From NCBI GenBank assembly GCA_053919585.1, contig CM132790.1: 64,000 nucleotides of DNA. The stretch is one strand, 5' to 3'. Shown piece after piece: positions 42,013-42,575 of the stretch. Position 1 is the first letter of the stretch, and every line of letters begins with the position of its first letter. The notes beneath the pieces were generated by a model. It was given only the letters and a program-made list of their open reading frames with translations, ran no database searches and was not told the origin of the DNA. The position numbers and the translations under genes were made by a program. This DNA comes from Euprymna scolopes. Its lineage: Eukaryota.

Positions 42013-42574
42013 TAATTATTTTCTACTATAATAATTGAATTTAAACATCTTGATTTTAAATGTTCATTTTACGTCAGTCAGACAGTGATCTAATCGTTAT
42101 ACGATGATCTACGCATAAGAGCTAAATTGACCGACTTTATATTTAACTGCAAGTGCTCAACAATAAGAAACGAATTTCTTAAAGAGACTGTCATAATTAT
42201 TTTCTACTACATTAATTATTAAATACCTGCATACACTAGTGTTTCACCCTTTCGGGAATCTTCAGTGCAGGGTGTCACCATTTATACCAGTCGAACGATT
42301 TGAACCCCGCATCACGAGACATCTCTGGCTCGATTAGCGGAGACCTAATCCATTCGGTTACAATAAACCGCTTGAAATAACGTTGAATTTAAACATCTTA
42401 ATTTTAAATGTTCATTTTACGTCAGTCAGACAGTGATCTAATCGTTATACGATGATTTACGCATAAGAGCTAAATTGACCGACTTTAATTCTAACCGAAA
42501 GTGCTCAACAATAGGAAACGAATTTCTTAAAGGGGCTGTCATCGTATAACGATTAGATCACTGTCTGACTGACT

Positions 42575-42575
<1 letters not shown>
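42013..42575 (-). mobile_element. Retrozyme-like tandem element: 348-nt unit with tRNA-type A/B boxes and HHR, embedded in (TA)n
   Basis: 42035-42194 repeats at 42383-42542; A box 42350-42360, B box 42296-42306, HHR 42226-42271. Confidence 0.75.
42226..42271 (-). ncRNA. Minimal type I hammerhead ribozyme, core intact
   Basis: cctgca CTGAAGA ttccc gaaa gggt GAAAC actagt GTA tgcagg: 6-bp helix I, GAAA-tetraloop helix II, palindromic helix III ACACTAGTGT, GUA triplet. Confidence 0.85.

What the first reader, a model, noticed from the sequence alone, without database searches (positions are those of the whole stretch)
42013..42575. 348-nt tandem retrozyme-like unit: tRNA-type Pol III promoter plus hammerhead with intact core, no T4 terminator
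Seen: a direct repeat with period 348 (42035-42194 = 42383-42542). On the minus strand the unit reads A box TAACCGAATGG, 43 nt, B box GGTTCAAATCG, about 25 nt, then HHR cctgca-CTGAAGA-ttcccgaaagggt-GAAAC-actagt-GTA-tgcagg. The sense strand of the whole AT-rich unit has no TTTT, while the antisense strand has three. Known: PLE termini and metazoan non-LTR retrozymes carry minimal type I HHRs with palindromic helix III, and schistosome SM-alpha repeats pair a tRNA-like promoter with an HHR. Inference: Pol III reads through tandem units, the HHR cuts monomers (possibly circular RNA of about 348 nt), and a Penelope RT/GIY-YIG re-inserts them into (TA)n. That would be a non-coding Penelope-driven SINE/retrozyme family that I do not recognise as described.
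Basis: partly seen in the sequence, partly recalled or inferred. Interest (0 to 1): 0.88.

Follow-up and report, generated by a model that had tools for sequence, protein, structure and literature searches.

The report
Hammerhead-carrying SINE-like retrozyme, Penelope-style insertion
This is a worn copy of an abundant 345-base non-coding mobile element of a mollusc genome, carrying tRNA-gene-type promoter boxes and a small self-cutting RNA motif and inserted into (TA)n repeats the way Penelope-like retrotransposons insert; the design is already known from blood flukes and animal "retrozymes", so it is a new family of a known kind.

Summary
42035-42194 repeats at 42383-42542 (94%, period 348). 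On the minus strand lie an A-box-like motif, 43 nt, a B-box-like motif, about 25 nt, and a complete hammerhead core.

The element spans 42012-42573 between two (TA)n tracts. It belongs to a family with thousands of copies in this 5.9 Gb genome: 3,564 exact copies of its 34-nt hammerhead, 6,748 of a sister version, and 16,824 B-box-plus-hammerhead matches against 8 in a control.

Of 27 insertions inspected, 24 end at the same tail base next to (TA)n. They are cut short at variable 5' points and hold 1.2 to 5 head-to-tail units. That is the Penelope-like integration signature.

In the family majority both boxes are better than in this copy (each 10 of 11; 2 of 20,000 shuffles). The sense strand has no TTTT (4% of shuffles).

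Not shown: self-cleavage, Pol III transcription, circular RNA. The hammerhead has a U-U mismatch at 10.1/11.1 and scores below Rfam's threshold. No tRNA model matches the head. PolyA RNA reads gave no support. The abundant autonomous Penelope-like elements here share no sequence with it.

The window copy has one head and one ribozyme and cannot release a monomer. The scan noted the same design on other pieces of this genome.

The parts
41996..42011 (.). (TA)n tract next to the element's 3' end (target microsatellite)
   Evidence: Read directly. The same arrangement is seen at 24 of 27 other insertions.
42012..42036 (-). Terminal 25-nt tail, the constant 3' end of the family. Here it is joined directly to a body copy.
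   Evidence: Direct repeat D3, 42012-42036 = 42193-42217, 92%. The family's 3' ends are shown.
42035..42194 (-). Body copy 2 (about 158 nt), the 3'-most partial unit, which lacks head and ribozyme
   Evidence: Direct repeat D2. BLAST maps it to unit positions 189-348.
42193..42225 (-). Internal tail between the ribozyme and the next body
42226..42271 (-). Minimal type I hammerhead. Helix I is CCUGCA/UGCAGG, the core is CUGAAGA...GAAA, helix II has a U-U at 10.1/11.1, helix III is the palindrome ACACUAGUGU, and the predicted cut follows GUA between 42232 and 42231.
   Evidence: Pattern match, unique in the window. HH9 16.5 bits, E 0.49. A majority-type copy aligns over the full length of RF00163 at 20.3 bits.
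42280..42382 (-). Head with tRNA-gene-type boxes: A-box-like at 42350-42360 and B-box-like at 42296-42306, each carrying one more mismatch than the family majority
   Evidence: No tRNA is called.
42383..42542 (-). Body copy 1. It starts exactly at the tail/body junction of the unit.
42539..42573 (+). 35-nt inverted copy of body sequence at the element's 5' end (Penelope-style inverted terminus)
   Evidence: Inverted repeats I18 and I19, 100% complementary
42578..42642 (.). (AT)32 tract next to the element's 5' end
   Evidence: Tandem Repeats Finder, 32.5 copies at 100%
48332..48662 (+). Second, older copy of the same superfamily. It is cut by an N gap at its 5' side, ends at the same tail base next to (TA)n, and its ribozyme reads CAAAC where GAAAC is needed.

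Best explanation
The locus is a decayed, atypical copy (93% identical to the family majority) of a young, abundant non-autonomous retroelement of 345 nt. Reading the sense (minus) strand, a unit is a body of about 158 nt, then a head of about 100 nt with tRNA-gene-type A and B boxes, then a minimal type I hammerhead, then a 36-nt AU-rich tail. What is shown: the family has thousands of dispersed ORF-free copies. They end at one fixed tail base next to (TA)n, are cut short at variable 5' points, hold 1.2 to 5 head-to-tail units, and sometimes carry inverted 5' pieces. This is the integration pattern of Penelope-like elements, which are very abundant and young in this genome and also end at (TA)n. 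What is inferred: a copy with two heads and two ribozymes, which is the commonest form, is transcribed from the first head, most likely by Pol III, which meets no T4 stop inside the unit. The two ribozymes pair through their palindromic helix III and cut out a unit-length RNA, which may be ligated into a circle. A Penelope-type RT/GIY-YIG then nicks (TA)n and primes on the AU-rich tail by microhomology. It copies a multimeric or circular template for more than one turn and joins the 5' end at another AT-rich microhomology. The window copy has only one head and one ribozyme, and mutated boxes, so it is a dead product rather than a source. The confidence given covers the identity of the family and its Penelope-style integration; I put about 0.45 on the full inferred chain.
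For: Copy number: at least 4,553 first-look candidates. There are 3,564 exact 34-nt ribozyme matches and 6,748 for the sister version with A10.1-U11.1. The pattern B box + hammerhead gives 16,824 matches against 8 in the reversed control. Architecture of 27 insertions: a constant 3' end, variable 5' ends clustered at AT-rich places, 7 starting at the tail/body junction and so giving whole-number arrays, and (TA)n flanks. Units are 97.6% identical to the majority, so the family is young. The majority A box is TAGCCGAATGG and the B box GGTTCGAATCG, 43 nt apart, each 10 of 11. Only 2 of 20,000 dinucleotide shuffles give such a pair. The majority sense strand has no TTTT although T is its commonest base. 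Only 4.2% of shuffles have none, against a mean of 3.3 expected, and 28 of 30 units keep this. The hammerhead core and all three helices align over the whole of RF00163. A dimer is predicted at -28.2 kcal/mol against -8.3 for each monomer. Between diverged copies the ribozyme is 92% conserved, against 68-81% for the head and 69-88% for the body (n=2). Other, unrelated tRNA-box + hammerhead + (TA)n elements exist in the same genome. One has both the tRNA and Hammerhead_1 above Rfam's gathering scores, at L003:82-192. Autonomous Penelope-like elements with an 806-808 aa RT + C-terminal GIY-YIG ORF are about 99% identical to one another, give 15,395 first-look GIY-YIG candidates, and end at (TA)n. 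There is no ORF above 34 aa inside the element.
Against: No experiment or RNA data here shows cleavage, Pol III transcription or circles. PolyA RNA-seq gave about 812 of 12 million reads, on both strands. Of these, 71% run on into unlike sequence, and no ends pile up at the cut site; polyA libraries are poorly suited to this question. The ribozyme has U-U where nearly all natural hammerheads have G10.1-C11.1, and it scores below Rfam's threshold. The head is not recognised as a tRNA by Infernal or ARAGORN. The predicted circular monomer is not unusually stable (z = -1.2, 63% paired). No examined Penelope-like element shares the tail or any other sequence. The T4-free result is only p of about 0.04.
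Confidence: 0.7

Rival explanations
1. It is a promoterless retrozyme. The A and B boxes are relics of a tRNA-SINE ancestor, and the RNA arises by read-through from neighbouring Pol II (or any other) transcription, as the retrozyme literature assumes.
For: A review states that animal retrozymes seem to have no promoters (PMC7761336). PolyA reads lie on both strands and mostly continue into flanking, unlike sequence. The head is not a recognisable tRNA.
Against: Both boxes are 10 of 11 in the majority at tRNA-like spacing (p about 1e-4). The exact B-box core GGTTCGAA is kept across diverged subfamilies. The sense strand is free of T4.
Confidence: 0.25
2. It is a Penelope-dependent SINE whose hammerhead no longer cuts. 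The ribozyme-plus-tail module is kept only as the part the reverse transcriptase recognises, and multimers arise from template jumps, not from circles.
For: There is a U-U at 10.1/11.1 and a sub-threshold Rfam score. The 3' ends lie 36 nt past the cut site, so cleaved linear RNA is not the template. Autonomous Penelope-like elements form the same partial tandems without needing circles (PMC8557442). The RNA fold is not rod-like.
Against: The core is intact in thousands of copies and is the best-conserved module between subfamilies. The more abundant sister subfamily has restored a Watson-Crick pair at 10.1/11.1. Other families keep helix II through swapped pairs such as UUGC...(G)CAU against UUCC...GGAU (selected on an intact core).
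Confidence: 0.3
3. It is a local satellite or segmental duplication, or merely the pseudo-LTR of one autonomous Penelope-like element, with no mobility of its own.
For: The window copy on its own looks like a short local repeat.
Against: Thousands of dispersed short arrays on all large contigs share one 3' end and (TA)n flanks, and none has an ORF between units.
Confidence: 0.02

Closest known systems
Sm-alpha / Sj-alpha SINE-like retroposons of schistosomes
   Same: Both are short (about 335 nt) non-coding repeats, dispersed and in tandem. Both combine a tRNA-derived head with Pol III-type boxes and a type I hammerhead, and both have over 10,000 copies (PMC2770079; PMC8490949).
   Different: The phylum differs, and no sequence comparison was possible because no Sm-alpha sequence was at hand. 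The Sm-alpha head is still called as tRNA-Gln by tRNAscan, whereas this head is not called by any tRNA model. Sm-alpha has a canonical, fast ribozyme with loop contacts. This one is minimal, with a palindromic helix III and a U-U at 10.1/11.1. The strict (TA)n target and fixed tail are documented here.
Metazoan non-LTR retrozymes (Cervera & de la Pena 2020)
   Same: Both are tandem units of 150-450 bp with low GC, a type I hammerhead per unit and no ORF. Both coexist with Penelope-like elements, and rolling or multimeric reverse transcription is proposed for both (PMC7229834).
   Different: Those are described as promoterless (PMC7761336) and as highly self-paired circles shown by northern blots. 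Here A and B boxes are present, the fold is not marked, and no circle is shown.
Minimal hammerheads and pseudo-LTRs of Penelope-like elements (Cervera & de la Pena 2014; Lunse et al. 2017; Craig et al. 2021)
   Same: Both have a short palindromic helix III that implies action as a dimer. Both show partial tandem and inverted insertions, variable 5' truncation and a (TA)n bias (PMC4209133, PMC8557442).
   Different: This element has no RT/GIY-YIG ORF, and no sequence is shared with the two Penelope-like families examined here.
Ceph-SINEs of squids and cuttlefish
   Same: Both are tRNA-headed SINEs of decapodiform cephalopods.
   Different: Ceph-SINEs carry a CORE/RTE-derived body and RTE-type tails (PMC5786205). 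They have no hammerhead and no (TA)n or Penelope-style ends.

Membership tests
Hammerhead ribozyme, type I (RF00163) | Conserved core CUGANGA ... GAAA ... and a cleavage triplet NUH | tested here: met
   CUGAAGA / GAAA / GUA in the window copy, and GUC in the majority.
Hammerhead ribozyme, type I (RF00163) | Three helices around the core, with helix I open | tested here: met
   The alignment covers the whole model, positions 1-45. Helix I has 6 bp, helix II 3 bp plus a U-U, and helix III 3-4 bp or a 10-nt palindrome.
Hammerhead ribozyme, type I (RF00163) | Score at or above Rfam's gathering threshold | tested here: not met
   20.3 bits against 34. The window copy scores 16.5 against HH9, threshold 52. 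There were no hits at gathering.
Hammerhead ribozyme, type I (RF00163) | A Watson-Crick pair at 10.1/11.1 (usually G-C) | tested here: not met
   U-U in this subfamily (3,564 exact copies). The sister subfamily has A-U (6,748 copies).
Hammerhead ribozyme, type I (RF00163) | Self-cleavage | not testable with these tools
   This needs in vitro transcription. The polyA reads show no ends at the cut site, which is not decisive.
Metazoan non-LTR retrozyme | Head-to-tail units of 150-450 bp, each with a type I hammerhead, with low GC and no ORF | tested here: met
   Units are 345 nt with GC 37%, in arrays of 1.2 to 5 units, and no ORF exceeds 34 aa. The window copy itself has only one ribozyme.
Metazoan non-LTR retrozyme | Expressed as unit-length linear and circular RNA | tested here: inconclusive
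   Only polyA libraries could be laid. Coverage was low and on both strands, and no informative joints were seen.
Metazoan non-LTR retrozyme | Highly self-paired RNA | tested here: inconclusive
   Circular minimum free energy -77 kcal/mol, 63% paired, z = -1.2 against shuffles.
tRNA-derived SINE | A head recognisable as a tRNA | tested here: not met
   No RF00005 match at E up to 10 on a majority-type copy. ARAGORN finds none.
tRNA-derived SINE | Internal Pol III A and B boxes at tRNA spacing | tested here: met
   TAGCCGAATGG, 43 nt, GGTTCGAATCG; 2 of 20,000 shuffles. Function was not tested.
tRNA-derived SINE | A 3' tail shared with the autonomous partner | tested here: not met
   No similarity to 38 loci of two Penelope-like families. 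Other families could not be fetched.
Penelope-like element integration (non-autonomous) | A fixed 3' end, variable 5' truncation, and partial tandem and inverted copies | tested here: met
Penelope-like element integration (non-autonomous) | Microsatellite (TA)n target | tested here: met
   24 of 27 insertions, and the window copy on both sides. The autonomous elements here do the same.
Sm-alpha / Sj-alpha | Sequence homology to the schistosome elements | not tested
The resemblance is one of architecture only.

The most novel reading that the evidence does not exclude
These elements are true SINEs whose autonomous partner is a Penelope-like element rather than a LINE. Their internal tRNA-type Pol III promoter would answer the open question of how animal retrozymes get transcribed. 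In this reading the hammerhead takes the place of a terminator by defining the RNA ends, and a T4-free unit lets Pol III read through into the next unit. The same head + hammerhead + tail design recurs with different heads in one genome, which suggests a modular SINE factory built on a Penelope 3' module.
Probability: 0.3. Interest if true: 0.7.

Novelty: new member of a known kind. Interest (0 to 1): 0.45.

Why it matters
Reviews of animal retrozymes state that they carry no promoter, so how they are transcribed is open. A large, young family with near-consensus A and B boxes, no T4 stop, two ribozymes per typical copy and clean Penelope-style ends at (TA)n makes that question directly testable. 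It also offers a clear case of SINE-like parasitism of Penelope-like elements. Decapodiform cephalopod genome papers report almost no SINEs (PMC13218726). If this genome is of that group, which I infer only from its size, its number of contigs and the mollusc labels on the RNA runs, such elements are probably sitting among the unclassified repeats. Their share of the genome is small: 16,824 units of 345 nt come to about 0.1%. The window locus itself is an inactive by-product.

Tried and rejected
- **Rfam at gathering thresholds:** nothing over the whole window. The many miRNA-family hits at relaxed thresholds are (TA)n/(TG)n artefacts.
- **tRNA finders:** ARAGORN found nothing on the window or on any locus.
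- **Search for an autonomous partner:** a GIY-YIG (PF01541) scan of the genome found a very abundant Penelope-like family and a relative about 70% identical to it. BLAST with 7-nt words found no similarity to the monomer, and their tails differ.
- **RNA evidence:** one read-laying run on polyA and oligo-dT runs was uninformative for cleavage, circles and strand.
- **Rod-like fold:** not supported.
- **Rfam on other tRNA-box + hammerhead families:** nothing called in L065 or L046. Only L003:82-192 passes.
- **Literature:** the Sm-alpha primary paper (PMC108972) is not held. No paper on hammerhead SINEs or retrozymes in cephalopods was found.
- **Other ideas rejected:** Ceph-SINE identity (RTE-type tails), satellite DNA, and pseudo-LTR only.

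Full report
**Observation.** The stretch lies between two (TA)n tracts, at about 41996-42011 and 42578-42642. On the minus strand the sequence reads an A-box-like motif TAACCGAATGG (42350-42360), then 43 nt, then a B-box-like motif GGTTCAAATCG (42296-42306), then about 25 nt, then a hammerhead. The hammerhead is CCUGCA-CUGAAGA-UUCCCGAAAGGGU-GAAAC-ACUAGU-GUA-UGCAGG, at 42226-42271. A pattern for this core occurs once in the window and in none of 100 shuffles. The sense strand has no TTTT, and the other strand has three.

A 25-nt tail occurs twice, at 42012-42036 and 42193-42217. A 35-nt piece at 42539-42573 is the exact reverse complement of 42421-42455.

**What the unit really is.** A search of the window's own genome (5.9 Gb, 925 contigs) with the 348-nt unit gave at least 4,553 first-look candidates and dozens of full-length matches at 90-93% identity on many contigs. 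I mapped 27 independent insertions. Twenty-four end at the same base of an AU-rich tail (...AATTATTATAGTAGAAAATAATTAT), followed at once by (AT)n. Their 5' ends vary, most are also flanked by (TA)n, and they hold 1.2 to 5 head-to-tail units.

The linear element, read on the sense strand, is therefore a body of about 158 nt, then a head of about 100 nt, then the hammerhead, then a 36-nt tail. The 5' ends cluster at AT-rich places. Seven of 27 start at the tail/body junction, which gives arrays of a whole number of units: two, or in L008 five. The commonest form is a partial body followed by head-ribozyme-tail-body-head-ribozyme-tail, so it carries two heads and two ribozymes.

The window copy differs. 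Its last unit has the body joined straight to the tail, so the locus holds one head and one ribozyme. Both of its boxes carry an extra mismatch, and its unit is 93.1% identical to the family majority, whereas the other units average 97.6%. No ORF above 34 aa lies inside it. A second, older copy at 48332-48662 on the plus strand ends at the same tail base next to (TA)n.

**Family-level test of the motifs.** In the majority of 57 heads and 30 full units, the A box reads TAGCCGAATGG and the B box GGTTCGAATCG, 43 nt apart. Each is one mismatch from TRGCNNAGTGG and GGTTCGANNCC respectively. Only 2 of 20,000 dinucleotide shuffles of the unit give such a pair on either strand.

The majority unit is 345 nt with 37% GC. 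T is its commonest base, yet it has no TTTT on the sense strand, against four AAAA. Only 4.2% of shuffles have no TTTT (mean expected 3.3), and 28 of 30 units keep this property.

The D-arm part (GCCGAATGGATTAGG) resembles that of long-variable-arm tRNAs, from my own knowledge of tRNA sequences. However, no tRNA model matches. RF00005 gave nothing at E up to 10 on a majority-type copy, and ARAGORN gave nothing anywhere. The head is therefore box-bearing and probably tRNA-derived, but not a recognisable tRNA.

**The ribozyme.** The majority reads CCUGCA-CUGAAGA-UUCCCGAAAGGAU-GAAAC-ACUAGU-GUC-UGUAGG. It aligns over the whole of RF00163 at 20.3 bits (gathering score 34), and the only flagged non-pair is at 10.1/11.1, which is U-U. 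Helix III (ACACUAGUGU) is a perfect palindrome, and a two-molecule fold is predicted at -28.2 kcal/mol against -8.3 for one molecule. This is the minimal, dimer-dependent type known from Penelope-like elements and amphibian retrozymes (PMC4209133, PMC7229834).

Genome-wide there are 3,564 exact copies of this 34-nt core and 6,748 of a sister version in which 10.1 is A, making an A-U pair. The looser pattern GGTTCGAA-N(12-45)-CTGANGA-N(8-25)-GAAAC has 16,824 matches against 8 for the reversed control. In that list older subfamilies carry CUGAUGA, and other families keep helix II with different pairs. These sequences were selected for an intact core, so the evidence is suggestive only.

In two diverged copies the ribozyme is 92% identical to the majority, against 68-81% for the head and 69-88% for the body. 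Whether the U-U version cuts cannot be told from sequence.

**Relatives of the design in the same genome.** L003:82-137 is called a tRNA (33.4 bits, gathering score 29) and L003:148-192 a Hammerhead_1 (45 bits, gathering score 34). The two lie 10 nt apart, in an element unrelated in sequence to this family. Further box + hammerhead + short tail + (TA)n elements with other heads lie at L003 (minus strand, 2617 and 2938), L065:1951 and L046 (minus strand, 968), although Rfam does not call these. Loose ends of RNA reads also show other heads joined to the same ribozyme region. The scan's earlier notes list the same design on other pieces of this genome. I treated those notes as leads and checked the point through.

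**Who moves it.** The window itself holds no Penelope-like element, only a LINE-type endonuclease ORF and a Gypsy-type pol. The genome, however, has 15,395 first-look GIY-YIG candidates. The best belong to one element of about 2.9 kb with an 806-808 aa ORF (RT motif near residue 499, GIY-YIG near 697). Its copies are about 99% identical to one another, lie in tandem and inverted arrangements, and end next to (TA)n. A relative about 70% identical does the same.

Target and insertion architecture therefore match, and they fit published Penelope-like behaviour (PMC8557442). However, BLAST finds no shared sequence, and the tails differ. The partner is not identified.

**RNA.** Public runs labelled as the same organism or as mollusc metagenome hold the family. 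Raw polyA RNA-seq gave 812 of about 12 million reads. Both mate orientations were present, and 71% of reads ran on into unlike sequence. There were no informative joints and no pile-up of ends at the predicted cut. This fits background or read-through transcription of many copies and related families. It neither supports nor excludes a Pol III or circular RNA, which polyA selection would lose. The predicted circular monomer is not unusually stable (z = -1.2).

**Mechanism.** The following is shown: this is a mobile, non-coding family integrated in the Penelope manner into (TA)n. Because insertions end 36 nt past the cut site and usually exceed one unit, the reverse-transcribed template was not a cleaved linear monomer. 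It was a multimer or a circle, with priming on the AU-rich tail, most simply through pairing with the nicked (TA)n.

The following is inferred: Pol III starts at the first head of a two-head copy, reads through the T4-free unit, and the two ribozymes release a unit-length RNA. I put about 0.45 on the full chain and much more on the identity of the family.

Two rival readings remain open, and they are compatible with each other. In one the boxes are relics and transcription is read-through. In the other the ribozyme is a relic kept only as a recognition module.

**Comparison and novelty.** The design is that of schistosome Sm-alpha and Sj-alpha, which are tRNA-Gln-derived SINE-like elements with a hammerhead (PMC2770079), and of animal non-LTR retrozymes (PMC7229834). 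A 2026 preprint argues that retrozymes derive from Penelope pseudo-LTRs (10.64898/2026.07.22.740005). A review says animal retrozymes seem to lack promoters (PMC7761336), so the boxes are the noteworthy part here. Ceph-SINEs are different, having RTE-type tails (PMC5786205). I found no description of this family or of hammerhead SINEs in cephalopods.

My verdict is a new family of a known kind, and the particular locus is a dead copy.

Noticed in passing
L063:2891-5909 (also L061, L062, L065, L066): A very young (about 99% identical) autonomous Penelope-like element of about 2.9 kb with an intact 806-808 aa RT + GIY-YIG ORF. Copies lie in tandem and head-to-head arrangements and end next to (TA)n. 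Near the 3' end is a hammerhead-like stretch (CUUGAAGA-AGCCCG...CGGGC-GAAAC) that does not fit the canonical core or helix I.
   Followed up: partly
L003:82-192: A different element in which an Rfam-level tRNA (33.4 bits) is followed 10 nt later by an Rfam-level type I hammerhead (45 bits) with the palindromic helix III ACUCGAGU.
   Followed up: partly
L020:2302-2418 and L020:2805-2936; L010:2544-2647: 5S rRNA-like matches (64 bits and 33 bits) and a U2-like match (41 bits) beside copies of the family. These are probably small-RNA-derived repeats, as reported in large numbers for squid genomes.
   Followed up: no
window:10535-11578 and window:61703-63991: A LINE-type endonuclease ORF (Exo_endo_phos_2), and a Gypsy-type pol fragment (RVT_1, RNase H, integrase) on the minus strand at the window's end.
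   Followed up: no
window:48250-48331: An N run (assembly gap or mask) cuts the 5' part of the second, older copy of the element. I left it as it is.
   Followed up: no
genome-wide: The sister subfamily with A10.1-U11.1 in helix II is about twice as abundant in exact ribozyme copies as the U-U subfamily, and it is listed in runs of 2-5 units more often. This may be a single substitution that improved the ribozyme in the more successful lineage.
   Followed up: partly
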